A stretch of 64,000 nucleotides of DNA from IMGVR_UViG_3300050120_000230:186001-250000, one strand, 5' to 3'. Counted from the stretch's first letter, positions 12,938 through 62,236 are shown. Program-made: numbers and translations. The notes: a model not told the origin generated them from the sequence alone.

Positions 12938-14155
12938 ATGGAACTCTTCTATGGTGTGTCGTATACAGTCTCGGAGGCTCACTTGCCAGAACCGCTCTTG
13001 TTCGGGATCATTTTGATCCCCGTCGCGATTTCGTTGTTCTGCAAGTATGCCTTGCGGTTCGAGATTTCGTGGCTCGAATTCGCCGCGCAACTGGTGATTG
13101 GTTTCTGCGTCTTCAGCCTGATTTGGGCTGTCGGTCGCTACTCGGCCGCCGGAGACACCGAAATCCTCAATGGCACGGTGCAGTCGAAGAACGCATGGCG
13201 TTTCTCCTGTCCGACCAACACCAGCAATCCGTGCCGCAACGGCTATTCCTGCCACTCGCACCAAGTCTGCTCGACCGTTGGTAGTGGCAAGGACGCCCAT
13301 GAGTCGTGCCATGAAGAGCACGATACCTGCTACGAATACGACTGGGAGCAGAACTGGTATGTGAAGTCGAACGTGCCGACCGCTTCCGAGATCGAGATCA
13401 AGCGCGTGGACGCGCAGGGCGCCTATATGCCGCCGCGCTACGACAAGGTTCAGGTCGGCGACCCGGTCTCCGGCACACATGCCTACAAGAACTGGGTGAA
13501 GGCTTCGGTCAACTCGCTCTTCAAGGAAGATGCGGGCAAGGACGAGACCTACAAGGCGCTGATGAAGCCCTATCCCATCGGCATCGTCGATTACTACAAC
13601 ATCGACCGGATCGTGACGCCCAATTTCCCGCTCGCCAACAAGCAAGCTTGGAACTGGGAACTGTCCAAGATGCTGGGCAAGCTCGGCCCGAGCCGTCAGA
13701 TGAACATGGTGGTGGTCATCGCCAACAACGTTCCGCGCGACTACGCCTATGGCGTTCGTCGTAGCTGGCAGGGGTTCAAAAAGAACGACGCGATCATCGT
13801 GATCGGCCTGCAAAATGGCAAGGTGTCGTGGGGCGAAACGATGTCGTGGTCGAAAAACTCGATCTTCAACATCGAAATGCGTAATATGGTGACCGATCTG
13901 CAAGGGACGGACATCAATGCGGTGAACCCCGCGACGTTCTTCGCCAACGTTCAGACGATCTCCACCAAGGACTTCGTCCGCCGCCCGATGAAAGAATTCG
14001 AGTACCTCAAGGGGGACATCCCGCCGCCGGTTTGGTTGATCGTCCTCTCCGTCATTCTCGCCATCCTGTTTGGCGTGGGAACCAGCGTGCTTTTCAACAA
14101 CGTCGATCTTGACGCCGCGATCTTCTCCGGCCGTCGCAACCAGAATTGGAGCTAA
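12938..14155 (+). CDS. membrane protein with TPM-like domain
   Basis: two N-terminal and one C-terminal TM helix; Cys-rich loop; SWQGFKKNDAIIVIG resembles the TPM W-x-G-K...N-G-hydrophobic motif. Confidence 0.6.
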   Translation: MELFYGVSYTVSEAHLPEPLLFGIILIPVAISLFCKYALRFEISWLEFAAQLVIGFCVFSLIWAVGRYSAAGDTEILNGTVQSKNAWRFSCPTNTSNPCRNGYSCHSHQVCSTVGSGKDAHESCHEEHDTCYEYDWEQNWYVKSNVPTASEIEIKRVDAQGAYMPPRYDKVQVGDPVSGTHAYKNWVKASVNSLFKEDAGKDETYKALMKPYPIGIVDYYNIDRIVTPNFPLANKQAWNWELSKMLGKLGPSRQMNMVVVIANNVPRDYAYGVRRSWQGFKKNDAIIVIGLQNGKVSWGETMSWSKNSIFNIEMRNMVTDLQGTDINAVNPATFFANVQTISTKDFVRRPMKEFEYLKGDIPPPVWLIVLSVILAILFGVGTSVLFNNVDLDAAIFSGRRNQNWS

Positions 14156-15342: not shown

Positions 15343-15524
15343 TGCGTCGCGAAGTCGTAACCGTGGGGGCGCTTTTGCGTCGTGGCTTCCGGCGAATGCT
15401 GGACCAAGAGGGTGTTTCCTATTCGGAAGACAGGGGGTTCCTCGACAGCCAGTTCATCGTCAAGGGTGAACCCGAGGCGATGGCCCGCGTCGAAAAGCGC
15501 ATCAAGGACACGCTCGGGAAATGA
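15342..15524 (+). CDS. small hypothetical protein
   Basis: TGATG coupling; 60 aa. Confidence 0.65.
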   Translation: MRREVVTVGALLRRGFRRMLDQEGVSYSEDRGFLDSQFIVKGEPEAMARVEKRIKDTLGK

Positions 15525-16090
15525 AGGCCATTTCCAAAGCCATCAAACGCGTTGAGGTAAAGGCCACCATCGAACGCAAGTATGAGGTGGTTCTCACGAA
15601 CAGCGAGAACCAGACCATTTGCGCGCTGCTGACCAATTCGCTCCGCGAGGCCCTCACCGAGGCAGCGGAGTGGGCCGACTTCTGTGGCATCGTTCTAACG
15701 CCGTATCGCGTCATGGGTAAGATCGTAGAGCCGGTCACCAAGGACACCTACAAGCAAACCACGCTCAAGACGTTCGCGCAGCTTCATGCGGAATATCGGA
15801 CGAGCGGTGGCGAACTGAATTGGAACAAGCTGATGCATTGGGAGTGGCAACGCTTCCGGGGCACCTACAAGGACAAGGAAGCCATGAAGTTGTGGCTCCT
15901 GCCGCATTTCATGGAGAGCAAGCCGCCGACGTTTGATGAGGCGGTGGCCCGTGCAGGGACCAAAGACTCCCCGGCCGTCGAATGGCTGAGCGCCAACGCC
16001 ACGGGCTCGTGGATGCCTTCCAAGGGCGGCTATCGGTTCTCCGATGATCGAGATGCCGCTCTGTTCAAACTGTTTTTCGCTGGAAACTAG
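15521..16090 (+). CDS. hypothetical protein, FKL-motif family
   Basis: ends YRFSDDRDAALFKLFFAGN. Confidence 0.7.
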   Translation: MKAISKAIKRVEVKATIERKYEVVLTNSENQTICALLTNSLREALTEAAEWADFCGIVLTPYRVMGKIVEPVTKDTYKQTTLKTFAQLHAEYRTSGGELNWNKLMHWEWQRFRGTYKDKEAMKLWLLPHFMESKPPTFDEAVARAGTKDSPAVEWLSANATGSWMPSKGGYRFSDDRDAALFKLFFAGN

Positions 16091-16099
16091 GAGGATCGC

Positions 16100-16489
16100 A
16101 TGTTCGAGATTCACGGCGAGGCCGATTCGAAAGTTCTCTACGATCTGTGCACCGAGCTTGGCGCGGATTACCGCAAGACCGCCGTCGTGCCGCTGGCGAG
16201 CGACATTGACACACGCATCGCCGCCGCACTGGCCGTGCCTGTGGCGCCCTACGCCAACTCCTTGGAAGCGGCTTTCGCGTTGAGGGACATCGTTTTCCCG
16301 AACGTCGAATATCTGAACGTGGATTTTCGCGAATATTTCTATGCGGATCACGGCATGTCCTATCATTGTGACGTGCGACATGAATACGGAGAAGGCTGCG
16401 GCCGGGGCTCCACCCGCGCCCGCGCGCTGGTGTGCGCTATCCTGATGCACGTCATCTATGCGTTGGATGAGCAACGGACTTCACGCTGA
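16100..16489 (+). CDS. hypothetical protein
   Basis: AGGAGG RBS; 129 aa. Confidence 0.7.
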   Translation: MFEIHGEADSKVLYDLCTELGADYRKTAVVPLASDIDTRIAAALAVPVAPYANSLEAAFALRDIVFPNVEYLNVDFREYFYADHGMSYHCDVRHEYGEGCGRGSTRARALVCAILMHVIYALDEQRTSR

Positions 16490-16911
16490 TGTTCTACGAG
16501 AAGGCCCTGCGTGGCCTCTCCATCGATGAGATGCAAAAGCTCATCAACATCATCGTAGCCGAAGGTCAGCGAAGCCAACCCCTCCTGACCGACTACGGGA
16601 AGATTACCAACGACGTTGTGTGGCTGCATAGCATCATGGGTATCGCGTTGCAGTTCACCTACCACAAGGGCAACGTGAACGTGCCGTCGTTCCGTCTAGA
16701 GGGTTCAGAGTGGGCGATCACTTTCAAAGGGTCGCGAAGCTCATCGCTGATGCCGCGCTTTCACGATTACATCGAAATCAGGATCGGGCCTCTGGAACGT
16801 ACCATGCGTCCGCCGCCCACCGCGACTAAGTTTTTCGCGCACCAATTTCGGCGGCGTGGTAAACTGTCGGACTTCAAGCACGACCTGACTTTGCTGAGGC
16901 TGACCCTGTGA
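16489..16911 (+). CDS. hypothetical protein
   Basis: TGATG coupling; ends SDFKHDLTLLRL, similar to the end of 9989..10528. Confidence 0.65.
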   Translation: MFYEKALRGLSIDEMQKLINIIVAEGQRSQPLLTDYGKITNDVVWLHSIMGIALQFTYHKGNVNVPSFRLEGSEWAITFKGSRSSSLMPRFHDYIEIRIGPLERTMRPPPTATKFFAHQFRRRGKLSDFKHDLTLLRLTL

Positions 16912-17207
16912 CCAGATATCGATTGAACATCGAAAGCGTAGCTCGTGTCGGCGGCTTCGTTGCGATGCTGTCTGTGTTTTTTATTTTGATGGGAACAACA
17001 CCGGAAGATAGTGTGCCGCCGTGGTGGGCCATCGCTCCCATGATCGTGTTGTTTTTGATGAGCGTCATCTATCTCTCTGGCGGCAACGCAGGCATGAAGT
17101 ATTTCGGAGACTGCCTCGCCAAGTTCTTCCTCATCAAGATCGAACCCGCCGATGAGATTTCCGAGATCGACGAGGATCGCTGCAAGGGCCGAGAGGTTCC
17201 AGATTGA
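16908..17207 (+). CDS. small membrane protein
   Basis: two hydrophobic helices. Confidence 0.6.
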   Translation: MTRYRLNIESVARVGGFVAMLSVFFILMGTTPEDSVPPWWAIAPMIVLFLMSVIYLSGGNAGMKYFGDCLAKFFLIKIEPADEISEIDEDRCKGREVPD

Positions 17208-17512
17208 AGCTCTTCCTCGACGATGAACGGTTTCCTCCGAACGATGGTGCGTTCTGGATCATCGTCAGAGACGTGGGCGAAGCCGTGACGTTGATGGAGC
17301 AGACCGGCTGTCCGGGTTTCCTGTCGTTCGATCATGATCTCGGGAAGAACGTCCCCACGGGTTATGATCTGGCTCACTGGATGGTTGAGCGAGACATGGA
17401 CCAAGATGGCAAGTTCATCCCCGCCAATTTTGAATACTACGTTCACAGTCAAAACCCACCGGGGGCCGCGAACATCAAGGCTTTGCTCGACAATTACTTG
17501 AAACAGCGGTAA
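17204..17512 (+). CDS. cyclic-phosphate-processing receiver-domain protein (cREC-like)
   Basis: KLFLDDER, LSFDHDLG, TGYD and VHSQNPPG motifs. Confidence 0.75.
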   Translation: MKLFLDDERFPPNDGAFWIIVRDVGEAVTLMEQTGCPGFLSFDHDLGKNVPTGYDLAHWMVERDMDQDGKFIPANFEYYVHSQNPPGAANIKALLDNYLKQR

Positions 17513-17538
17513 ATAGGGTCTCCACCAACGGAGAACCC
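17510..17538 (+). promoter_or_regulatory. TAAATA late promoter overlapping an RBS-sequestering hairpin
   Basis: TAAATA at 17510-17515; GGGTCTCC (17516-23) pairs with GGAGAACCC (17530-38). Confidence 0.6.
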
Positions 17539-17540
17539 CG

Positions 17541-17753
17541 ATGAAACAGAAGCAGCCGCGCAAGGCGCGGAACATGGTGGCGAAGGCAATGCACGAGTGC
17601 AAGCTGTTCGCCCCGAAAGCCATCCCCTCCAAAAAGGGCAAGGGCACCATCTACAACCGTAAGAGCCGGAACGCCAAAGAGCCTTCCGGCTCTTATTATT
17701 TTGGACTACTGGTTCGCTCCGACATATACTTTGGGCATGGCGTTTGCATTTAG
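17541..17753 (+). CDS. arfA: ArfA-like alternative ribosome-rescue factor
   Basis: RNMVAKAMH...LF...KKGKGTIYNRK aligns by eye with E. coli ArfA NAIEALLHDPLF...KKGKGSYMRK; 70 aa with hydrophobic tail. Confidence 0.7.
   Translation: MKQKQPRKARNMVAKAMHECKLFAPKAIPSKKGKGTIYNRKSRNAKEPSGSYYFGLLVRSDIYFGHGVCI
17660..17702 (+). terminator. intragenic intrinsic terminator within the arfA-like ORF
   Basis: AAGAGCC-TTCC-GGCTCTT plus ATTATTTT; alternative stem 17660-70/17685-95. Confidence 0.7.
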
Positions 17754-17916
17754 AAACTTCGTGATTGCTATCGGTTGCTTGGGCGTTGTGCTCGGCTTCG
17801 GCGGCATGATCGTGGATTGTTTCTTCAATGCCGTCTGGCCGGTCACCGCAGTGGGGTTCTTGCTTTGGTGGATCGCTGGCGAAACGCTCTGCAAAATAGA
17901 CGGAGACGAGGATTAA
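17737..17916 (+). CDS. small membrane protein, probably leaderless
   Basis: two TM helices; TTGGAC-N18-TATACT ends 6 nt before the ATG. Confidence 0.6.
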   Translation: MAFAFRNFVIAIGCLGVVLGFGGMIVDCFFNAVWPVTAVGFLLWWIAGETLCKIDGDED

Positions 17917-17917
17917 C

Positions 17918-18190
17918 ATGCCATCCATGGAACTAGATGCATCTGACATTCAATTGCTGGCCAAGGCCAAGCAAGGCCCCGTATATCGCGGGCTGTTCGG
18001 CTGGCCGATCAACTCGATGATCGGCCCCATGCGAATCCAACACATGGTAGACTACGGCTACCTGCAATTCATTTACGACTGGGGTAAGGATCGCCCGGCC
18101 GTCCGCATCACGTCGCTGGGAGACTGTCGCCTGCGAGAAGAGTTGGAGCGCGACGTGCAGATCGTTCGGGGCGTCGATATTCGCGTCTAA
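17918..18190 (+). CDS. hypothetical protein
   Basis: 90 aa; follows GAGGA. Confidence 0.65.
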   Translation: MPSMELDASDIQLLAKAKQGPVYRGLFGWPINSMIGPMRIQHMVDYGYLQFIYDWGKDRPAVRITSLGDCRLREELERDVQIVRGVDIRV

Positions 18191-26515: not shown

Positions 26516-28276
26516 ATGACGGCCACCATCAACGTTTTCAACATGCCTCAAGTCGTGACGTTGACTCTGGGTGGCGACACCGGAGCCACACTCATGAACT
26601 ACCCGGTCAATAGGACTGACTTCAAGCTCGCCAAGGGCGTCACGACCGAGATCATGTTCTTCGTGAAGGACACGGATCGGCATCCGATTACTGTCTCCGG
26701 TCTGGCAAATGCTGGAATCGTTGGTCTGCGTTTGATTGTCACCGACATCGACGACAACGTTTTGCTACTTGGTAGCCAGAACTCGACCACGACGACGTAC
26801 ACCATTTCGCAGGGCGAGACGGTGACGACATATTCGAACAGTGCGATGTTCACGTCGAACACGGTCACCATTTCCTCGACTTCCAATTCTTCTGGTTCGA
26901 ACTCGATTGTCAGCAACACGACGATGACCACGGTTTTGACCGTCTCTCCGGGCGCTGGTGATTACGTGGTCCCCGACTTCGTCAATGCCATTGTGGTTGA
27001 GACATGGGGTCCGGGCGGCGCGGGTGTGCTTTCTCCCGAAACTGGCGCCGGTGGCGGCGCCTACGCGCTCAAGAACTTCACGGTCACGTCCGGCGAAACG
27101 TTCCCGTTTTTCGTCGGCAATTCGTCTGCACCTGAAAAGGCGACGTTCTGGGGCAACTCGACTGACCACAACGCCGCGACTTTTGGTGCGTTCGGTGGTG
27201 CTTGGGTCGCGAACAATGTCACCGACGTTTCAGCCCAACTCGGTTCCCCGTTCGGCGCTTACGACGTGGGCTACTACGGCGCCCCGCCGATCACCGGGCA
27301 ACTGGACGGCCGCGCATCGGCGTGGTCGGGCGGCAACGCTTCTACCAATCCGGCTGGGGTCAATGTAAGCACAATCGAAGGCGGCGGCCAGAGTAACGGC
27401 GTTGTGGGCACCTCGCCCGGCGGCGGCGCCCCGGCATCTATCAGCAACAGCACGATGTATGGCGGCAATGGCCAGCTTCGCATCACGGAATACTACGATC
27501 AAGAGGCTATCGCGAACGCAATTGCGAACGCGCAGTCGAACTCCAATTCGATCTCGAACACCGTGACTTCCAATTCGAACGTGACGACCAATTCGGTGAC
27601 GATCACGAACACCGTCACTACCTCGGTTACTTACTTCAGCAACGTCGTGACCCTCGACCCGAGCGTCTTGGTCCCGGCTCCGGGTATCGACCCCGCCAAG
27701 GGCGTTTGGATGCTTCGTCTAAAGGCCACCGACATCGTCGATTGGCCGCTGGGCTTCCTGCGTTACTCGGTGATTGCCGACCGGATCGGTGGAGATCAGG
27801 TGATGCTCTACACCGACCGTGGCTACGGACCTTATAGTTCGCTGCTAGTGATCGATGGGCCGTTCCCGATGCCAAACGAAGCCACGAACGTTACGGCCAA
27901 CAGTATGGTCATGCTCGGCCAAAGTCTACAGAGCGGCGCCTACGCGGGTCCTGCCCAAGTCCGCAATTTGAGTGGACTGTCGAGCGTTGTCTATCACATG
28001 GGTGGCGTTGGTGACGGGTTCACTGGCTCGGTTACAATTCAAGGTTCATTGGATAATTCCATTTCGCAAAACGACGCGGACTGGATGCCAGTGGAGATTA
28101 CCGATTCCACCGGTCAAGGCACCATTTCTGGCGGGACGATCACCTTCAATACCCCACCGACTCTAACGGATTTTAACGTTACTGTGCGTGGCAACTACAT
28201 GTGGCTCCGTTTCATCGTCACTGAAATGACCATTGGCGCCAAAGCGTTCACCAGCCTTGACTTCCGAGCAGACTGA
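26516..28276 (+). CDS. probable virion structural protein with Ser/Thr/Asn-rich linkers and a Gly-rich insert
   Basis: TAAATA 5 nt upstream; WGPGGAG...GAGGGAY Gly-rich fibre-like segment. Confidence 0.7.
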   Translation: MTATINVFNMPQVVTLTLGGDTGATLMNYPVNRTDFKLAKGVTTEIMFFVKDTDRHPITVSGLANAGIVGLRLIVTDIDDNVLLLGSQNSTTTTYTISQGETVTTYSNSAMFTSNTVTISSTSNSSGSNSIVSNTTMTTVLTVSPGAGDYVVPDFVNAIVVETWGPGGAGVLSPETGAGGGAYALKNFTVTSGETFPFFVGNSSAPEKATFWGNSTDHNAATFGAFGGAWVANNVTDVSAQLGSPFGAYDVGYYGAPPITGQLDGRASAWSGGNASTNPAGVNVSTIEGGGQSNGVVGTSPGGGAPASISNSTMYGGNGQLRITEYYDQEAIANAIANAQSNSNSISNTVTSNSNVTTNSVTITNTVTTSVTYFSNVVTLDPSVLVPAPGIDPAKGVWMLRLKATDIVDWPLGFLRYSVIADRIGGDQVMLYTDRGYGPYSSLLVIDGPFPMPNEATNVTANSMVMLGQSLQSGAYAGPAQVRNLSGLSSVVYHMGGVGDGFTGSVTIQGSLDNSISQNDADWMPVEITDSTGQGTISGGTITFNTPPTLTDFNVTVRGNYMWLRFIVTEMTIGAKAFTSLDFRAD

Positions 28277-43683: not shown

Positions 43684-45708
43684 ATGGCAATCGGTTACGT
43701 TGTTTATATGGGGAAAGGCGATCCAGTCGGAGACACTATCAAAGTGCCGCTCCGTCCTCATGCTGACCTTGCCTCTGCTCAGGCAGCGGCCGGAGATCAT
43801 TCTCGCGTTTTCGAAGTGAATGTCGAAAATCCCGATGAAACGGGCAAGGGAACGTGCACCATCATCAAGCAAATCGATGGAAACATCGAAGAGGGCTTGC
43901 GTGCATGGCCCGACATGACTTTCGATGACACCGAAGACGCACAAAGTGCTCTGGATTGGCATGACCGTCATGCGAAAATCCATGCGGGCAAAATGAAATC
44001 CGAGCCGGGTCGTAGAACCAGCCACGCAGATTTCGTCAATATTCACAAACGCAAGGCCAAGGCCGCCAAAGAATGGCTTGCCAAGAACGGAGCCGCGAAG
44101 GAGCCCATGAAAGAAGACGCAAACGCCGAACACTATCACGGTCTTACTGGCTGGGTTTCTGATTACAAAGCCCAGCGCAAAGCTGGCAACGTTGCGGACG
44201 CCAAGCAGACTCGCGACAACATCAAAGCCGTCATCAAGAAACACAATCTCGATGCAACCAAAGTCTGGGGCGAAGACCCCGATCAACCGAAGGAACCCAT
44301 GAAAGAATCCAAAGCAGTGAGCGGCCTCGCCTTTCTCGTCGAGAGCGAACTCGAAAAGGCCCAAGTCGTTATTGCGGCGAAGGGTATTCTGGACAAGCTT
44401 CAGAAAATGGCTGAAGACCTCGCCAAGACCGAAGCCGACGATATCATGCCCATGCTCGACAGTATGCGTCTGACGTTTGGCCCGGAACTGACGGACAGCT
44501 TCAACGACATCACCACCGCGAAGATTCGCCAGACCATGGAAGCCGTCAAGGGCGCCAAGGAAGCGATCACGCGTGAAGTCGGCCGCCTTGAAAACGAAGT
44601 CAACGGCGACATGACCAATGACATTGGCATGGGCGACCAAGACAACGGCGAAGATATGGATGCAGGCGACATGGGTGCGGAAGCTCCCGAGGGCGAACTG
44701 AACATGGGCGACGACAACATGCCCCCGATGGATGGTGCGGAAGCTCCGATGCCGGGTGACGACGAAGAAGTTCCCGATCCGGCCGCAGATGGTGGTTTGG
44801 ATGCAGCGTTCGACGACGCTGCCGCAGACACCACGGCCGCCGGTCGTGCAAAGAAGGAAAGTGTTCAGCGCAACGTGAAGGCGCTCAGCGAGTCCAAGAA
44901 CCCGGATCGCCTCGTGTTCGAAACCTTCCGCCGCACTCTGAAGGAATCGAAAGACGCCGTTCGTGCTGCTCAAGCTGTGGCACAGGCATTCGCCATCGAT
45001 TTCGCCGACGTGGTCGCCATCGTGAAGGAAGGCAAGACATTCAAGGACGAAAAAGGCAAGACCGACAAGAACAAGGATCGCGCCGAAGACCGCAAGGAAA
45101 AGAAGCGCAATCGTCCCTCCGATCTCGACGAGGATTTCGGCGACAACAAGGCCCCTCCCTTCGGCAAGAAGGCCGATAAGGACGAAGGTGAGGACAAGAA
45201 AGACGACAAGGCCGACAAAAAGCCTGCCGCTTCCAAGAAGCCTTGGGAAAAAGATGACGAGAAAGTCGAAGAAGGTAAGACCTTCAAAGACGAAAAAGGC
45301 AAGACCGACAAGAACAAGGATCGCTCCGGCGAGCGCAAAGACAAGAAGCGCGAACGTGAAGAACTCGGGGAGGGTTCCAAGCGCCCTTTTGACTCTGCCA
45401 GCCCCCCGGACGTGCACCAGAAAAAGATAGCTCTCAAGACTTTGAAGATGTCGGACGTTGGTGCAGATGTCATGGGTGGCATGAGCAAGGTTGAAGCCCG
45501 CTCGTTCCTCAAGAACCGGTGCGGATACAGCGATGCTCGAATCGCAAAACTCGAAGAGGGTGCGATTATGAACATTGGTGAGGCGACTATTGAGCAGTTG
45601 CAACGACGCGAAGAAGACCTCGCTCGTGCAGCCGCCGCCCGCCGCGCCAAGGGCTTCGGCGCCATGGCTGATGCCAAGGAAAAGCAGAAACCCGCCGAGA
45701 AAAAATGA
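43684..45708 (+). CDS. prohead core/scaffold-like polyprotein
   Basis: 674 aa, highly charged; repeated xxE-[GSD] junctions; central coiled coil. Confidence 0.65.
   Translation: MAIGYVVYMGKGDPVGDTIKVPLRPHADLASAQAAAGDHSRVFEVNVENPDETGKGTCTIIKQIDGNIEEGLRAWPDMTFDDTEDAQSALDWHDRHAKIHAGKMKSEPGRRTSHADFVNIHKRKAKAAKEWLAKNGAAKEPMKEDANAEHYHGLTGWVSDYKAQRKAGNVADAKQTRDNIKAVIKKHNLDATKVWGEDPDQPKEPMKESKAVSGLAFLVESELEKAQVVIAAKGILDKLQKMAEDLAKTEADDIMPMLDSMRLTFGPELTDSFNDITTAKIRQTMEAVKGAKEAITREVGRLENEVNGDMTNDIGMGDQDNGEDMDAGDMGAEAPEGELNMGDDNMPPMDGAEAPMPGDDEEVPDPAADGGLDAAFDDAAADTTAAGRAKKESVQRNVKALSESKNPDRLVFETFRRTLKESKDAVRAAQAVAQAFAIDFADVVAIVKEGKTFKDEKGKTDKNKDRAEDRKEKKRNRPSDLDEDFGDNKAPPFGKKADKDEGEDKKDDKADKKPAASKKPWEKDDEKVEEGKTFKDEKGKTDKNKDRSGERKDKKREREELGEGSKRPFDSASPPDVHQKKIALKTLKMSDVGADVMGGMSKVEARSFLKNRCGYSDARIAKLEEGAIMNIGEATIEQLQRREEDLARAAAARRAKGFGAMADAKEKQKPAEKK
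45028..45324 (+). repeat. two near-identical 54-bp direct repeats encoding EGKTFKDEKGKTDKNKDR
   Basis: copies at 45028-45081 and 45271-45324. Confidence 0.9.
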
Positions 45709-55964: not shown

Positions 55965-57749
55965 ATGGCTGGTTTGAAGACTCGATATAAAGTTGTCGGC
56001 ATCGGCATCTTGGCTCTGGGAGGCGTCTTCGGTCTGAAGTCTGCCGTTCAACATGGCCTGATCCCGGCTCCGGCCGCTCTCAAGGCGATGATCCCGCAGA
56101 AGGCTGACATCGCGACGCTGGGTGGCAACATCCAGATCGCGCCGACCCAGACCTATGACCTGTCCGCCGCGCCGGAAGCGAACGCGCCCAAGCGCACGTT
56201 CCTGATGATTCCGTGGCAGGGCGGCGGTGCGCTGACGCTCGCCAACGGCGGCGCCGGTGACGCCAGCGGCACGTTGATGCAGAAGTTCGCGGGTTCGAAC
56301 GTGAACCTTCAGCGGCAGGACGACTACGGCAAGATGCAAGAGCAACTGCTGAAGTTCGCCAGCGGCTTCAAGGCCGGTCAAGCGAACCCGGATGGTGCGG
56401 CCTACGTCCAGATCATGGGCGACGGTGGCCCGGCGTTCTTCGCCGGTGTCGAGCCCCAGATGGAGAAGCTCGGCCTTCACCTGAAGATCGTCGGCGTGAC
56501 CGGCTTCTCGCACGGCGAAGACAAGTGCATGGCGCCGGACGTGAACGGTGACCCGAACAAGGCCCGTGGCGACCTGATCGCCGCCGTGCCGCGCGACGGT
56601 GACTGGAACATCTGCGTCAAGTGGGCGTCGGACAACAACATTCCGATCAACACCGACAACACGGTCTACGATCCGACCGCCATCAACTTCGTCGATACGG
56701 ACAGCTTCACGCAAGCCGACGACAAGTTCATCGCGGGCGCCTACGAAGATCGTGACGAAGCCAAGAACGGCATCAAGACGGGCAAGCGCGTCCACGTCCA
56801 GATCAACGGCGTGGCGACGTGGACTCCCGGCGACGTGACCGTCATGGAGAAGAAGGGTGGCGTCGTTTCGCTGGCCTCGACCAAGGACTACGACCAGCAG
56901 ATGCCCGCCGTCATCATCGGCATCAAGGAAGAAATGGACAAGCACCCGGCGTTCGTCACCGGTATGCTTCGGGCCGTTGACCGCGCATCGTTCCAAGTCC
57001 GCACGACTTCGGATGGTGTGCAGAAGATGTCGGAAACTGAAGCCAAGGTGTTCGGCTCGGCGGGCGGCGACGAAGCGAAGCCGGAATACTGGGCACGCTT
57101 CTTCAACGGCTTCGACAGCCCGGACGGCAAGGTGAAGCTCGGTGGGTCGCGCGTTTCGACGCTGGCCGAAATCCGTGACTTCATGGGCATGGGCACCGGC
57201 ACCCTGAACGTCTACCAAGGCGTCTGGAACGTGTTCGGCGACTACGACAAGACCTTCTACCCGAAGCTGGTCCCCAGCTATCCGAAGTTCGCTGACGTGG
57301 TCGATACGAGCTACATCAAGGCCGCCCTCAACGGCGTCCAGATGACGGCTCCGACTTCGACGGCGTTCTCCACCCAGAAGACGATGTCGGCGACCGTGTC
57401 CAAGAAGGCCGTCTCCATCGAGTTCGACAACGGTAAGGCGACGATCCGCCCGACCAGCCGCGCTCAACTGGTGGACATCGCCAACCAGTCCGGCATGACC
57501 AGCCTGCTGATCCGCATCGAAGGTCACACGGACAACACCGGCAACCCGGATGCGAACGTCGCCCTGTCGCGGGCTCGCGCTCAAGCGGTGGCTACGGCGC
57601 TGACGAACATGGCCCCGGCCACGTTCCCGGCGACCCGTATGGAAGTGCGTGGCTACGGCGACACGAAGCCGGTCAACGATACGGCCGACCAGAACTCGCC
57701 GACCGAGCGCGCGAAGAACCGCCGCGTCGAGGTGATCCTCGGCAACTAA
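55965..57749 (+). CDS. ABC transporter substrate-binding protein (NitT/TauT-like) fused to a C-terminal OmpA-like peptidoglycan-binding domain
   Basis: N-terminal membrane anchor; IEFDNGK, EGHTDNTG, LSRARAQAV, GYG and NRRVEV OmpA motifs. Confidence 0.85.
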   Translation: MAGLKTRYKVVGIGILALGGVFGLKSAVQHGLIPAPAALKAMIPQKADIATLGGNIQIAPTQTYDLSAAPEANAPKRTFLMIPWQGGGALTLANGGAGDASGTLMQKFAGSNVNLQRQDDYGKMQEQLLKFASGFKAGQANPDGAAYVQIMGDGGPAFFAGVEPQMEKLGLHLKIVGVTGFSHGEDKCMAPDVNGDPNKARGDLIAAVPRDGDWNICVKWASDNNIPINTDNTVYDPTAINFVDTDSFTQADDKFIAGAYEDRDEAKNGIKTGKRVHVQINGVATWTPGDVTVMEKKGGVVSLASTKDYDQQMPAVIIGIKEEMDKHPAFVTGMLRAVDRASFQVRTTSDGVQKMSETEAKVFGSAGGDEAKPEYWARFFNGFDSPDGKVKLGGSRVSTLAEIRDFMGMGTGTLNVYQGVWNVFGDYDKTFYPKLVPSYPKFADVVDTSYIKAALNGVQMTAPTSTAFSTQKTMSATVSKKAVSIEFDNGKATIRPTSRAQLVDIANQSGMTSLLIRIEGHTDNTGNPDANVALSRARAQAVATALTNMAPATFPATRMEVRGYGDTKPVNDTADQNSPTERAKNRRVEVILGN

Positions 57750-57815: not shown

Positions 57816-58625
57816 ATGGGCGTCCAATCCCTCCTGCTGCCTAACGAGAAGGTCAACGAGCGCGTTTCGCTGATCCTGACAGGCGGTTGGGTTTTGTTCA
57901 TTCTCGCCTTCTGGTGGGGTGTCCTGCCGCACGCTTCTGCGCTGATCCCCACCCCGCCCGAAGTGGCGAAGGCTGGGTTGATCCAATGGAACCAAGGCGC
58001 GGTCATCGTTGCCGACTCCAACGGTATTCATGCTGGCCAACTCATCATCAGCATTTTCACCAGCCTATCGGCGATCTTTTTCGCTCTTCTGTTGGGCCTA
58101 TCACTGGCCTATCTCTCGACGATCCCGTTGTTCAAAGCGCCGGTGCGCTTCATTGGGAGTGCGAGGGTTCTCAGCCTTACAGGCATGACCTTCATTTTCG
58201 TTCTGGCTACGCCCAATGGCTACTGGCTCAAGGTGTCGGTTCTGATCTTTGCCATCGTGGTTTTCTTCATCAACGCCATGCTTCAAGTGATCGAAGACAT
58301 TCCACAAGGTCGGTTCGACCATGCTCGAACCCTTGGAATGAATCACTGGGAAGTTCTTCGTGAAGTGGTCATCCGGGGAACACTTGCTTCCGCGTTTGAT
58401 ACGCTGCGGATGAATGCCGCCATGGCGTGGATGATGCTGACCATGGTCGAAAGCATGTCGCGTTCCGGCGGTGGGATTGGCATCGTGCTGGTCGAGCTTG
58501 CTCGGACGGCCAACTATGCCGCAATCTTCAGCGTTCAGTTGATGATTTTCGTCGTCGGTATCGCCCAAGACAAACTCGTGCAGTTCGCCAAATTGGCAGC
58601 CTGCCCTTACACGAAGGGTCAATAG
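57816..58625 (+). CDS. ABC transporter permease (SsuC/TauC-like)
   Basis: about six TM helices; EAA-like loop DHARTLGMNHWEVLREVV. Confidence 0.88.
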   Translation: MGVQSLLLPNEKVNERVSLILTGGWVLFILAFWWGVLPHASALIPTPPEVAKAGLIQWNQGAVIVADSNGIHAGQLIISIFTSLSAIFFALLLGLSLAYLSTIPLFKAPVRFIGSARVLSLTGMTFIFVLATPNGYWLKVSVLIFAIVVFFINAMLQVIEDIPQGRFDHARTLGMNHWEVLREVVIRGTLASAFDTLRMNAAMAWMMLTMVESMSRSGGGIGIVLVELARTANYAAIFSVQLMIFVVGIAQDKLVQFAKLAACPYTKGQ

Positions 58626-60646: not shown

Positions 60647-62236
60647 ATGGACATTCTAGAGCAACTTTTGAGTCAGGCATTCGCCGCCGAAGGTTTGGAC
60701 CCCGCACTTGCTGTGGTGTCGCCTTCGGAGCGGCCGGACCTTGCCGATTTTCAATCGAACGGAGTGTTTCTAGCGGCCAAGGCTGCGCGGATAAATCCTC
60801 GGGCTCTGGCCGAGCGGATCGTTGAACGGCTCAAACACCCAGACATCACGTTCGAAGTAGCCGGGCCGGGCTATATCAACATGACGCTGGGTCCGGCTCT
60901 GCTCGAAAAGATGCTGCTGGACAACAGTCCGATCCCACAGGTTTCCGGTCGGATCGTGTTGGATTTCGGTGGACCGAATGTCGCCAAGCCGATGCATGTG
61001 GGTCATATGCGGTCTCTGGTGATCGGTGACGCCCTTCAACGGATTTTGCGGTTCGTGGGCTACGAGGTGCTGTCCGACATCCACCTCGGCGACTGGGGCC
61101 TCCAAATGGGCCTGTTGCTGGCGGCCTTGGAAGGCACACCGCTACATGACTACAATATCGCGCTGTTGGAAAAAACCTATCCACAGGCGGCGGCTCTTGC
61201 CAAAGAGGATGAACCCTTCCGGTTGAAGGCACAGATGTTCACGCGCCTACTGCAACAAGGTGATCCCGAGCTTATGCAGCGGTGGCGGAAAATGGTCTGC
61301 GTGAGCATGACCACCGTCAATCGGGAGCTTGCTGCTCTGAAAGTCAATTTCACTCTCATGAAGGGTGAAAGTGACGTTCAGGACTTGATCCCCGATATGA
61401 TCGCGAGCTTCGTCGCCAAAGGGATCGTAGAGGAAGACAACGGGGCGCTCGTCGTCCGGGTTGGAGAACCTCCACTCATCCTGCGGAAGTCGGATGGTGC
61501 GGCTCTCTATTCCACGACCGATCTCGCGACGATCCTTGATCGGAAGGCAGCCTTCGATCCCGACAAGATCATCTATGTGACCGATGAACGGCAGCAACTT
61601 CACTTCAAGCAGGTTTTCGCGGCGGCCGAGATGGCTGGTTATCTGAACGGCAAGCTCGAACTCGAACACATCTGGTTCGGGACGGTGAACGACGCCAATG
61701 GCAAGCCACTCAAGACGCGGGCTGGTGGTGTGCCGAAGTTGCACGACCTGATCGAAGAAGCGATCACCAAGGCGTCCGAGAAGAATGCTGAATCGGCGAT
61801 CCCGGTGGCTATGGCGGCGTTGAAGTTCGCCGATCTACAAAACCCTCGGACAGGGTCGTATTCTTTCGATCTCGATAAGTTCCTGAGCTTCGAAGGCAAG
61901 ACCGGCCCATATCTGCTCTATCAAGCGGTGCGGATCAAATCCATCCTCGTCAAGTCGGTTGAACCCGGCCCGATTACGCTTGAGACCGCACAGGAGCGGG
62001 CTCTTGCGTTCAAGCTGGTGTTCGGTTTCCGGCAGGCGCTCGATGGCGCCGTGCGGCGATTGTCGCCCAAAGAGATCGCCGATCACGCCTACGATCTCGC
62101 GCAATCCTTCTCGAAGTATTATGCGAACACGCAGATCGGAGAATCACCGTCGAGGGTGGCCCTCTCTGCCAAGGTGTTGGCCCAACTGGAATGCTGCTTG
62201 GGTCTGATGGGTATCGATATCCCCGAGCGGATGTGA
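60647..62236 (+). CDS. argS: arginyl-tRNA synthetase
   Basis: N-terminal add-on domain (ADFQSN, VAGPGYIN), PNVAKPMHVGHMRS HIGH motif, GDWGLQMG, KSDG..LY.TTDLA, EGKTGPYLLY and DALR-type anticodon domain. Confidence 0.95.
   Translation: MDILEQLLSQAFAAEGLDPALAVVSPSERPDLADFQSNGVFLAAKAARINPRALAERIVERLKHPDITFEVAGPGYINMTLGPALLEKMLLDNSPIPQVSGRIVLDFGGPNVAKPMHVGHMRSLVIGDALQRILRFVGYEVLSDIHLGDWGLQMGLLLAALEGTPLHDYNIALLEKTYPQAAALAKEDEPFRLKAQMFTRLLQQGDPELMQRWRKMVCVSMTTVNRELAALKVNFTLMKGESDVQDLIPDMIASFVAKGIVEEDNGALVVRVGEPPLILRKSDGAALYSTTDLATILDRKAAFDPDKIIYVTDERQQLHFKQVFAAAEMAGYLNGKLELEHIWFGTVNDANGKPLKTRAGGVPKLHDLIEEAITKASEKNAESAIPVAMAALKFADLQNPRTGSYSFDLDKFLSFEGKTGPYLLYQAVRIKSILVKSVEPGPITLETAQERALAFKLVFGFRQALDGAVRRLSPKEIADHAYDLAQSFSKYYANTQIGESPSRVALSAKVLAQLECCLGLMGIDIPERM

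What the first reader, a model, noticed from the sequence alone, without database searches (positions are those of the whole stretch)
17541..17753. Phage ArfA-like ribosome-rescue factor made from a built-in non-stop mRNA (possible tmRNA sensor)
Seen: the 70-aa ORF has a RNMVAKAMH..LF..KKGKGTIYNRK core. A hairpin plus U-tract (17677-17702) lies inside the ORF at codons ~46-54, 50 nt before the stop codon. Beyond it the DNA looks intergenic, carrying a TTGGAC-N18-TATACT promoter for the next gene. Established: E. coli ArfA (72 aa, KKGKGSY) is made from a truncated non-stop mRNA, is tmRNA-tagged and destroyed when trans-translation works, and accumulates as a ~55-aa form when it does not. B. subtilis BrfA uses an intragenic terminator the same way. 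Inference: the phage carries the whole feedback circuit and deploys a rescue factor only when host trans-translation is saturated or blocked, for example by anti-phage RNases.
Basis: partly seen in the sequence, partly recalled or inferred. Interest (0 to 1): 0.9.

Follow-up and report, generated by a model that had tools for sequence, protein, structure and literature searches.

The report
Huge-phage ArfA with built-in terminator
A 415-kb phage carries a divergent copy of the bacterial ribosome-rescue peptide ArfA, and a conserved transcription terminator sits inside the gene before its stop codon, so the peptide is probably made only when the host's main rescue system (tmRNA) is overloaded; this is a known bacterial design, seen here maintained in a phage lineage.

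Summary
ORF 17541-17753 (+, 70 codons) is real and lies on an IMG/VR viral contig of 415 kb.

**ArfA similarity.** The ORF matches Pfam ArfA (PF03889) at E=9.6e-4. That is 19 bits, below the 25.5-bit gathering score. All nine close relatives also match (best 3.4e-6). A profile built from the clade alone finds only the ArfA chains in the PDB. The Ala and Phe that E. coli ArfA needs for RF2 activation and recruitment are conserved, as is the KKGKG-x-Y-x-RK core.

**Hairpin.** In all 13 related loci the same hairpin plus T-run sits inside the ORF and ends at codons 52-55. The stops lie at codons 57-99. The stem shows compensatory changes. DNA and protein conservation collapse right after the T-tract.

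**Most likely mechanism (inferred, not shown).** A non-stop mRNA is produced. [quoted passage not shown]

**Limits.** The downstream promoter is not above chance. Phage ArfA genes are already annotated (RXM, HTVC027P, J2-1), so this is a new member of a known kind. The conserved cREC neighbour is worth following up.

The parts
17541..17753 (+). ArfA-like ORF, 70 codons as annotated (start ATG 17541, stop TAG 17751-17753)
   Evidence: Pfam PF03889 E=9.6e-4; clade profile hits only ArfA in the PDB
17530..17533 (+). Shine-Dalgarno GGAG, 7 nt upstream of the ATG
   Evidence: read from the sequence
17541..17702 (+). Codons 1-54: the part predicted to be present in the terminated (non-stop) mRNA. 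It encodes the conserved core (A16, F23, KKGKG 31-35, Y38, R40).
   Evidence: conservation in A1/A3; residue mapping to E. coli ArfA; T-run ends at 52-55 codons in all 13 loci
17659..17696 (+). Intragenic hairpin: 13-bp stem (17659-17671 with 17684-17696), inner 2 bp (17673-17674 with 17681-17682), 6-nt apical loop
   Evidence: z = -6.4; covariation: 96.8% of cells paired, 4 pairs changed on both sides, 0/500 shuffles reach the score
17693..17702 (+). T-rich tract TTATTATTTT; its last 6-7 nt follow the stem and it ends with codon 54. Predicted 3' end of the transcript at about 17700-17705.
   Evidence: a T-run follows the hairpin in all 13 loci
17703..17753 (+). Tail of the ORF (codons 55-70 plus stop): not conserved, probably rarely or never translated
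   Evidence: tails differ in sequence and length (56-98 aa ORFs); nucleotide identity drops to 41-55%
17204..17512 (+). Upstream neighbour: cREC (cyclic-phosphate-processing receiver-like) protein, 102 aa, same transcription unit. The linkage is conserved.
   Evidence: PF20274 E=1.6e-24; cREC lies within 1.8 kb of the ArfA-like gene in the window plus 10 of 13 loci
15521..17512 (+). Tightly packed co-directional genes upstream (15521-16090, 16100-16489, 16489-16911, 16908-17207, 17204-17512). The ArfA-like gene is the last gene before the terminator.
   Evidence: ORF layout; no other convincing + strand terminator in between
17702..17730 (+). Promoter-like TGGACT-17-TATACT: weak, not above chance, not part of the conserved element
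   Evidence: 2 found, 2.0 expected

Best explanation
The ORF is a divergent, phage-borne member of the ArfA family of RF2-dependent alternative ribosome-rescue peptides. It keeps the family's characteristic cis-regulatory design. An intrinsic terminator (13-bp stem 17659-17696 plus T-tract to 17702) ends the operon's transcript inside the ORF at about codon 54, so the mRNA has no stop codon (shown: sequence and conservation; inferred: that termination occurs there). Ribosomes stall at the 3' end. While host tmRNA-SmpB is available, the nascent peptide is SsrA-tagged and degraded. When trans-translation is saturated or disabled, an untagged peptide of about 53-55 aa accumulates. Such conditions could arise from mass mRNA cleavage during infection or from RNase-based host defences. 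The lysine/arginine-rich segment (KKGKGTIYNRKSRNAK) would then occupy the empty mRNA channel of non-stop ribosomes. F23 and A16 (the equivalents of E. coli F25 and A18) would recruit and activate host RF2 to release the peptide and free the ribosome. All of this last part is inferred from E. coli ArfA and B. subtilis BrfA.
For: ArfA similarity:
- PF03889 at E=9.6e-4 for this protein; 9 of 9 close relatives match, best 3.4e-6.
- The clade-only profile A3 finds only the six ArfA chains in the PDB (E 0.009-0.03) and nothing else below E=1.
- hhalign against E. coli ArfA gives 85% probability, E=6.5e-6. It aligns A16 with A18, F23 with F25, KKGKG with KKGKG, Y38 with Y39 and R40 with R41. These positions are at least 90% conserved in the clade.
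- A profile search of 1.84 billion proteins returns only 42 clusters, among them canonical-looking ArfAs.

Non-stop design:
- The hairpin folds with z = -6.4.
- The same hairpin plus T-run lies inside the ORF in 13 of 13 loci, at down to 42% protein identity.
- The T-run ends at codons 52-55, while stops lie at codons 57-99.
- The stem covaries: 4 pairs with compensatory changes, 96.8% of cells paired against 25-56% for slid registers.
- Conservation collapses after the T-tract.
- The predicted product length equals that of active E. coli ArfA (55-60 aa forms were used for the structures; PMC8012679).

The mechanism is established for ArfA and BrfA (PMC8012679, PMC6881298).

Phage origin: IMG/VR contig, PHROG virion proteins, and very few Pfam hits among the large ORFs.
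Against: - The Pfam score (19.0 bits) is below the gathering score (25.5), and the PDB hits are only E of about 0.01. The match covers about 33 residues of a low-complexity, lysine-rich peptide.
- The KH motif of ArfA/BrfA is not kept (R43-N44).
- No transcript, protein or activity data exist.
- The host is unknown, so neither terminator efficiency nor RF2 compatibility can be judged.
- AlphaFold gives a mostly disordered model (pLDDT 67, pTM 0.23). This is expected for ArfA but gives no support.
- Six of seven ArfA-like ORFs in GenBank phages have an ordinary stop and no hairpin, so phages do not need the non-stop design.
Confidence: 0.7

Rival explanations
1. The design and consequence are the same, but the hairpin acts mainly as an RNase III (or other nuclease) processing site or as a 3' stabiliser, as in E. 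coli arfA, rather than as an intrinsic terminator. The mRNA is still non-stop.
For: E. coli arfA uses RNase III cleavage of a long hairpin, and transcription termination as well (PMC8012679). The E. coli control hairpin folded here is comparably long. The 13-bp stem with an internal loop is long enough for RNase III.
Against: A T-run directly follows the stem in all 13 loci. This is the signature of an intrinsic terminator and is not needed for RNase III.
Confidence: 0.12
2. The terminator is just the leaky operon terminator, and the protein is made chiefly as the full-length 70-aa form from read-through transcripts. There is no tmRNA control.
For: An in-frame stop exists at 17751, and phage terminators are often leaky in long co-directional gene arrays.
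Against: The tail is unconserved in sequence and length (56-98 aa ORFs), and nucleotide identity drops to background right after the T-tract. In L006 the next gene starts inside the tail. A terminator would not be held at a fixed codon (52-55) with covariation if its position inside the ORF did not matter.
Confidence: 0.08
3. The peptide is an ArfA-derived blocker rather than a rescuer. It occupies the empty mRNA channel to keep tmRNA-SmpB (or a host defence that senses stalled ribosomes) off ribosomes, without productive RF2 activation.
For: ArfA and SmpB bind overlapping sites (PMC8012679). The N-terminus (MKQRxPRKARNM) and the KH position differ from canonical ArfA.
Against: The equivalents of A18 (RF2 activation) and F25 (RF2 contact) are at least 90% conserved in the clade. 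A pure channel blocker would not need them. The non-stop design makes expression depend on tmRNA failure, which makes little sense for a tmRNA inhibitor.
Confidence: 0.06
4. Chance ORF or chance similarity: a lysine-rich small ORF that happens to overlap an operon terminator.
For: The peptide is short and of low complexity, and its HMM score is sub-threshold.
Against: The N-terminal 45 residues are conserved across more than 25 clusters from different metagenomes. ArfA is the only family or structure hit repeatedly. Functional residues are kept.
Confidence: 0.03

Closest known systems
E. coli ArfA (YhdL; PF03889; PDB 5MDV, 5U4I, 5H5U, 5MGP)
   Same: Small (about 70-codon) ORF. Conserved A/F/KKGKG-Y-RK core. 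Hairpin inside the ORF before the stop. Predicted active product of about 54 aa. Unconserved hydrophobic tail. Expected tmRNA-dependent repression.
   Different: About 33% identity over 33 residues only, and below the Pfam gathering score. Different N-terminus. One-residue insertion in KGKG-T-I-Y. KH motif replaced by R-N. The hairpin starts earlier (codon 40) and is followed by a clear T-tract, so it looks like a terminator rather than mainly an RNase III site. Phage-encoded. Linked to cREC rather than to mscL/zntR.
B. subtilis BrfA (YqkK)
   Same: A rho-independent terminator inside the coding region gives a non-stop mRNA, tmRNA-controlled abundance and RF2-dependent rescue (PMC6881298). The regulatory logic is identical.
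   Different: BrfA is considered unrelated in sequence to ArfA. The phage protein matches ArfA, not BrfA.
ArfA-like genes already present in phage records: Citromicrobium phage RXM g10, pelagiphage HTVC027P gp30, Pseudoalteromonas phage J2-1, Pseudomonas pf16, Salmonella Arash, Ralstonia RsoM2USA, Erythrobacter XM05, Roseobacter CRP-212
   Same: Phage-borne ArfA homologs (PMC8953757; PMC12753301). RXM also has an 11-bp hairpin inside the ORF. The N-terminus of RsoM2USA (KNVVAKDL) resembles this clade.
   Different: Six of the seven inspected end with an ordinary stop 12-17 codons after KGKGS and have no pre-stop hairpin. They are pre-truncated and presumably expressed constitutively. None has cREC within 1.5 kb (tested for the four that were in the search set: J2-1, RXM, pf16, Arash). 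P0001 itself finds no relative among 50,697 GenBank phages and matches no PHROG.
tmRNA-SmpB and phage-encoded translation helpers of huge phages (tRNAs, aaRS, PTH2, IF3)
   Same: Part of the repertoire by which large phages buffer the host translation apparatus (PMC7824862). This window also encodes an arginyl-tRNA synthetase.
   Different: ArfA is not listed among the jumbo-phage ribosome-rescue functions in that survey (0 occurrences). It acts by recruiting host RF2.

Membership tests
ArfA (PF03889) | Match to the family HMM at or above Pfam's gathering score | tested here: not met
   19.0 bits against a 25.5-bit cut-off, E=9.6e-4, residues 15-44 on profile positions 15-43 of 44. All 9 close relatives match at E<=0.1, best 3.4e-6. 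This is an operational cut-off, not a biological feature.
ArfA (PF03889) | Specific, reciprocal profile-level similarity to experimentally characterised ArfA | tested here: met
   The clade-only profile A3 hits the six ArfA chains of the PDB (E 0.0086-0.03) and nothing else below E=1. hhalign gives 85% probability, E=6.5e-6. The profile search of 1.84e9 proteins retrieves canonical-type ArfAs (P0034, P0043, P0046). One search is circular because A2 contained E. coli ArfA, so it is not counted.
ArfA (PF03889) | Lys/Arg-rich KKGKGSY-RKGK segment that fills the mRNA channel | tested here: met
   K31 K32 G33 K34 G35 ... Y38 ... R40 K41 align with E. coli K33-G37, Y39, R41, K42. They are at least 90% conserved in the clade. 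There is a one-residue insertion (I37).
ArfA (PF03889) | Residues for RF2 activation and recruitment (E. coli A18, F25; PMC8012679) | tested here: met
   A16 and F23 align with A18 and F25. Both are at least 90% conserved in A3.
ArfA (PF03889) | KH motif in the C-terminal part (shared by ArfA and BrfA; PMC8012679) | tested here: not met
   The aligned positions are R43-N44, and relatives have R-N/R-D/R-E/R-S. The importance of the motif has not been established experimentally, according to the review.
ArfA (PF03889) | Made from a non-stop mRNA: stem-loop inside the ORF upstream of the stop, with a poorly conserved tail | tested here: met
   At sequence level only: hairpin plus T-tract at codons 40-54, stop at codon 71, conserved in 13/13 loci with covariation; tail unconserved. 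Transcript ends were not measured.
ArfA (PF03889) | RF2-dependent release of peptidyl-tRNA on non-stop ribosomes; synthetic lethality or complementation with ssrA | not testable with these tools
   Needs biochemistry or genetics. Only single-chain structure prediction was available, and it gave a disordered model.
Intrinsic (rho-independent) terminator | Stable G+C-rich stem-loop immediately followed by a U-rich tract | tested here: met
   13-bp stem (7 G-C, 5 A-U and 1 G-U pairs in the outer helix); MFE -28.8 kcal/mol for the 71-nt stretch 17645-17715 that holds it; then TTATTTT. A T-run follows the stem in all relatives.
Intrinsic (rho-independent) terminator | Actual termination of transcription at the site | not testable with these tools
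   No RNA data are available for this uncultivated phage.
BrfA (B. subtilis YqkK) | Sequence similarity to BrfA | not tested
   No BrfA hit appeared in the Pfam, NCBIfam or PDB searches. It was not compared directly. Only the regulatory logic is shared.

The most novel reading that the evidence does not exclude
In a lineage of very large phages (contigs of 415, 569 and 578 kb) the non-stop ArfA and the adjacent cREC enzyme form a coupled RNA-damage response. Host RNase-type defences, or the phage's own mRNA turnover, create 2',3'-cyclic-phosphate RNA ends and non-stop ribosomes. tmRNA saturation is read out directly by the non-stop arfA message, which then releases a phage-made RF2 recruiter. 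cREC meanwhile processes the damaged RNA ends. The phage would thus use the host's trans-translation capacity as a sensor for counter-defence.
Probability: 0.2. Interest if true: 0.75.

Novelty: new member of a known kind. Interest (0 to 1): 0.5.

Why it matters
ArfA's self-limiting design, in which the factor is made from a non-stop mRNA and so appears only when tmRNA fails, is a textbook bacterial feedback loop. This finding shows the design is actively maintained in a phage lineage: the stem covaries, the transcript end point is fixed at codons 52-55, and the downstream sequence is free to vary. Most other phage ArfA copies have instead switched to a plain stop codon. That contrast gives a natural experiment on when a virus benefits from gating a rescue factor on the host's trans-translation capacity. 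It also adds ArfA to the list of translation-buffering functions of huge phages. The conserved cREC neighbour offers a testable link between RNA-end repair and ribosome rescue. The practical value is modest: better annotation of small phage ORFs. Several GenBank phage ArfA ORFs are unannotated or mislabelled.

Tried and rejected
- NCBIfam gave no match for the ORF, and PHROGs gave none.
- blastn of the 6-kb neighbourhood against GenBank phages found nothing. tblastn of the protein gave only noise at E>4.
- The genome-contig scan with the clade profile found no cellular copy. The viral-contig scan found only the window's own contig. The metagenome scan found two loci.
- ARAGORN and Rfam found no tRNA, tmRNA or other known RNA in the 64-kb window. 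Whether the phage has its own tmRNA elsewhere in its 415 kb is unknown.
- The PDB search with A2 was discarded as circular, because A2 included E. coli ArfA. It was repeated with A3.
- AlphaFold2 on the clade alignment gave a mostly disordered model with one helix at residues 12-19 and pTM 0.23. No fold search was run, because a model of that confidence gives meaningless matches. No multimer or ribosome modelling is available.
- Six full-text literature searches found no paper that describes non-stop regulation of a phage ArfA. The library is limited to open-access papers and bioRxiv.

Full report
**What is there**

The window is part of IMGVR_UViG_3300050120_000230, a 415,409-bp viral contig. 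Its gene content fits a huge tailed phage:
- Most large ORFs have no Pfam family.
- PHROG virion structural proteins lie at 26516-28276 and 43684-45708.
- It also encodes ribonucleotide reductase, a DnaB-like helicase, a Toprim protein, an SF2 helicase and an arginyl-tRNA synthetase.

The ORF 17541-17753 (+) is the last of a run of tightly packed co-directional genes that starts at 15521. It has a GGAG 7 nt before its ATG.

**Is it ArfA-like?**

The protein alone matches Pfam ArfA (PF03889) at E=9.6e-4. The match covers residues 15-44 on profile positions 15-43 of 44. The score of 19.0 bits is under the curated 25.5-bit cut-off. NCBIfam and PHROGs give nothing.

Eight close relatives were found among 5.8 billion proteins. 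Two carry a precomputed PF03889 hit, and one is named ArfA by JGI. All nine members match PF03889, best E=3.4e-6.

A profile of the nine sequences was run against 1.84 billion cluster representatives. It returned only 42 clusters at E<=1e-3. Among them are sequences with the canonical proteobacterial ArfA look, P0034, P0043 and P0046.

A profile made only from the 28 nearest sequences, without any E. coli sequence (A3), was searched against all PDB chains. The only hits below E=1 were the six distinct ArfA sequences, at E 0.0086-0.03. An earlier search with A2 is disregarded because A2 contained E. coli ArfA.

hhalign of A3 against E. coli ArfA, taken from MG1655, gives 85% probability and E=6.5e-6. 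The residue alignment is:
- A16 with A18
- F23 with F25
- K31-G35 with K33-G37
- Y38 with Y39
- R40-K41 with R41-K42

According to the review PMC8012679, A18 is needed to activate RF2, and F25 contacts the RF2 beta-sheet. The basic C-terminal part fills the empty mRNA channel. All these positions are at least 90% conserved in the clade.

The KH motif shared by ArfA and BrfA is not kept (R43-N44). The N-terminus (MKQRxPRKARNM) is clade-specific.

AlphaFold2 with the clade alignment predicts one short helix (residues 12-19) and otherwise disorder, with pLDDT 67 and pTM 0.23. ArfA is unstructured off the ribosome, so this neither supports nor contradicts the assignment. I did not run a fold search on such a model.

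Conclusion: this is a divergent ArfA-family peptide. The similarity is short but specific and falls on the functional residues.

**The hairpin**

The stable structure pairs G17659-A17671 with T17684-T17696 (13 bp), has two further inner pairs, and is followed by TTATTTT ending at 17702. The 71-nt stretch 17645-17715 that holds it folds at -28.8 kcal/mol against -12.2 +/- 2.6 for dinucleotide shuffles, so z = -6.4, and 0 of 200 shuffles fold as well.

The T-tract ends exactly with codon 54. The stop codon is 49 nt further on.

I fetched DNA for every relative I could, 13 loci besides the window. Twelve of them differ from one another, and one (L005) breaks off before the hairpin; the count of 13 used in this report is these twelve plus the window. 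They go down to 42% protein identity and include contigs of 569 and 578 kb. Every one has a 10-13-bp G+C-rich stem followed by a T-run inside the ORF.

The T-run ends at nt 157-166, which is codon 52-55, in all 13. The stop codon lies anywhere from nt 169 to nt 295, giving ORFs of 56-98 aa.

On an alignment of ten loci:
- 96.8% of cells form standard pairs, against 25-56% when the 3' partner is slid by 1-3 columns.
- Four pairs carry changes on both sides, in 7 cells.
- None of 500 column shuffles reaches the observed covariation score.

The residues encoded by the 3' arm (PSGSY, PPGLY, SGPY ...) change as the pairing dictates.

Nucleotide identity to the window is 72-85% upstream of the hairpin in ten of the twelve relatives (62% and 66% in L021 and L020, the two most distant). 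It falls to 41-55%, which is background, in the 100 nt after the T-tract. In the closest relative, L006, the hairpin is 100% identical. The small membrane ORF that follows in the window is absent there, and the next conserved gene starts inside the ArfA tail.

So the element is real and under selection at the RNA level. Its position relative to the reading frame is fixed, and what lies between it and the stop codon is not.

**How it most likely works**

The anatomy is the one established for E. coli arfA and B. subtilis brfA.
- In E. coli arfA, a stem-loop inside the ORF gives a non-stop mRNA by termination and/or RNase III cleavage.
- In B. subtilis brfA, a rho-independent terminator lies inside the ORF.

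In both cases the product is SsrA-tagged and degraded. The truncated factor accumulates only when trans-translation fails (PMC8012679; PMC6881298).

The E. coli control folded here shows its known hairpin at codons of about 51-66. The phage version is more compact, spanning codons 40-52, and has a proper T-tract, so intrinsic termination is the more likely route to the non-stop end.

The predicted product of about 53-55 aa matches the active length of E. coli ArfA.

What is shown:
- the ORF
- the specific ArfA similarity
- the hairpin and T-tract with their conservation, covariation and fixed position
- the unconserved tail

What is inferred:
- termination at that site
- tmRNA tagging
- RF2 recruitment and rescue
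- the biological trigger

**Context and the cREC neighbour**

The gene immediately upstream (17204-17512) is a 102-aa cREC protein (PF20274, E=1.6e-24). A cREC gene lies within 1.8 kb of the ArfA-like gene in the window and in 10 of 13 other loci. This holds even where genes have been inserted between them (L008, L010, L021) and where the orientation is convergent (L013). The exceptions are short contigs.

cREC is predicted to resolve 2',3'-cyclic phosphates on RNA ends or cyclic ADP-ribose derivatives. It has not been characterised experimentally. It occurs in up to 18% of jumbo phages (PMC7824862; PMC9503650). Neither paper mentions ArfA.

Metal-independent RNases of host defence systems produce both cyclic-phosphate ends and truncated mRNAs, so a functional coupling is plausible. 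The loci are related phages, however, so shared ancestry explains much of the linkage. I rate the coupled-module reading at about 0.2.

**Comparison with what is known, and novelty**

Phage ArfA is not new as an annotation. tblastn with E. coli ArfA against 50,697 GenBank phage records finds ArfA-like ORFs in the following:
- Citromicrobium phage RXM (annotated; one sentence in PMC8953757)
- Pseudoalteromonas phage J2-1 (annotated)
- Pseudomonas phage pf16 and Ralstonia jumbo phage RsoM2USA (unannotated)
- Salmonella phage Arash (labelled ribosomal protein L2)
- Erythrobacter phage XM05
- Roseobacter phage CRP-212

Pelagiphage HTVC027P gp30 is reported as an ArfA-domain gene expressed early and late in infection (PMC12753301).

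I inspected seven of these. Six end with an ordinary stop 12-17 codons after KGKGS and have no pre-stop hairpin, so they encode the already truncated peptide. Only RXM has an intragenic hairpin.

The clade studied here differs in several ways:
- It is more divergent from canonical ArfA. It has no tblastn relative among the GenBank phages, no PHROG, and no copy in 185,579 representative bacterial genomes.
- It is found on very large phage contigs.
- It is linked to cREC.
- It keeps the non-stop design in every member examined.

I found no paper describing non-stop or tmRNA-dependent regulation of a phage ArfA, within an open-access library only.

Overall this is a new, divergent member of a known family that uses that family's known regulatory trick. 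The phage setting and the contrast with stop-terminated phage copies are the interesting part.

**Verdict**

- Observation: confirmed, with corrected hairpin boundaries. The promoter does not count as evidence.
- Interpretation: supported as far as sequence analysis can go.
- Mechanism confidence: about 0.7.
- Novelty: new member of a known kind.
- Interest: 0.5.

Noticed in passing
window 17204-17512 (+); L001 4659-4967, L006 856-1161, L007 949-1257, L009 219-527, L013 3157-3471 (-), L021 1160-1558 and others: A cREC (PF20274) gene, predicted to process cyclic phosphates, stays within 1.8 kb of the ArfA-like gene in the window and 10 of 13 related loci. This holds despite insertions and one inversion. 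It is absent next to the canonical-type phage ArfAs tested (J2-1, RXM, pf16, Arash).
   Followed up: partly
L018 (Pseudomonas phage pf16, about 1486-1638), L023 (Ralstonia phage RsoM2USA, about 1459-1656), L019 (Salmonella phage Arash gp99c): ArfA-like ORFs in GenBank phages are unannotated in pf16 and RsoM2USA, where an opposite-strand hypothetical CDS is called instead. In Arash the ORF is labelled 'ribosomal protein L2'. Six of the seven phage ArfA-like ORFs inspected have a normal stop and no pre-stop hairpin.
   Followed up: partly
window 17725-17737: The -10-like TATACT ends 7 nt before the ATG (17737) of the next small ORF, a 59-aa predicted membrane peptide at 17737-17916 with only a weak GGG upstream. 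If the promoter were real, the mRNA would be leaderless. The promoter match is not above chance.
   Followed up: no
window 17703-17917 compared with L006 1354-1389, L009, L004: The stretch right after the terminator is a variable junction. The 59-aa membrane ORF is missing in L006 and only weakly similar in L009 and L004. The following 90-aa gene (17918-18190) is conserved in six loci.
   Followed up: partly
window 60647-62236 (+): A full-length arginyl-tRNA synthetase (N-terminal, catalytic and DALR domains; E=9e-78). This is another translation-apparatus gene in the same phage.
   Followed up: no
window 55965-57749 (+) and 57816-58625 (+): A 594-aa protein with a C-terminal OmpA-family peptidoglycan-binding domain, followed by a protein with weak similarity to ABC-transporter permeases. 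This hints at a Gram-negative host. The local G+C content is raised, 0.60-0.63 at 54-58 kb.
   Followed up: no
L001 (GCA_040384025.1 contig JAWVHG010000015.1, 569,661 bp) and L021 (Ga0495625_0000006, 578,292 bp): Relatives of this locus sit on contigs of 569 and 578 kb with the same phage-like gene neighbourhood. If these are complete phage genomes, they are among the largest known. One is deposited in NCBI as part of a metagenome-assembled genome.
   Followed up: no
L013 708-1694 (-): An IS1595-family DDE transposase gene lies 1.3 kb from the ArfA-like gene in one related contig.
   Followed up: no
window 12938-14155 (+): A 405-aa protein with a very strong match to phrog_2087 (E=8e-95), a family of unknown function. 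It is a conserved phage protein with no Pfam family.
   Followed up: no
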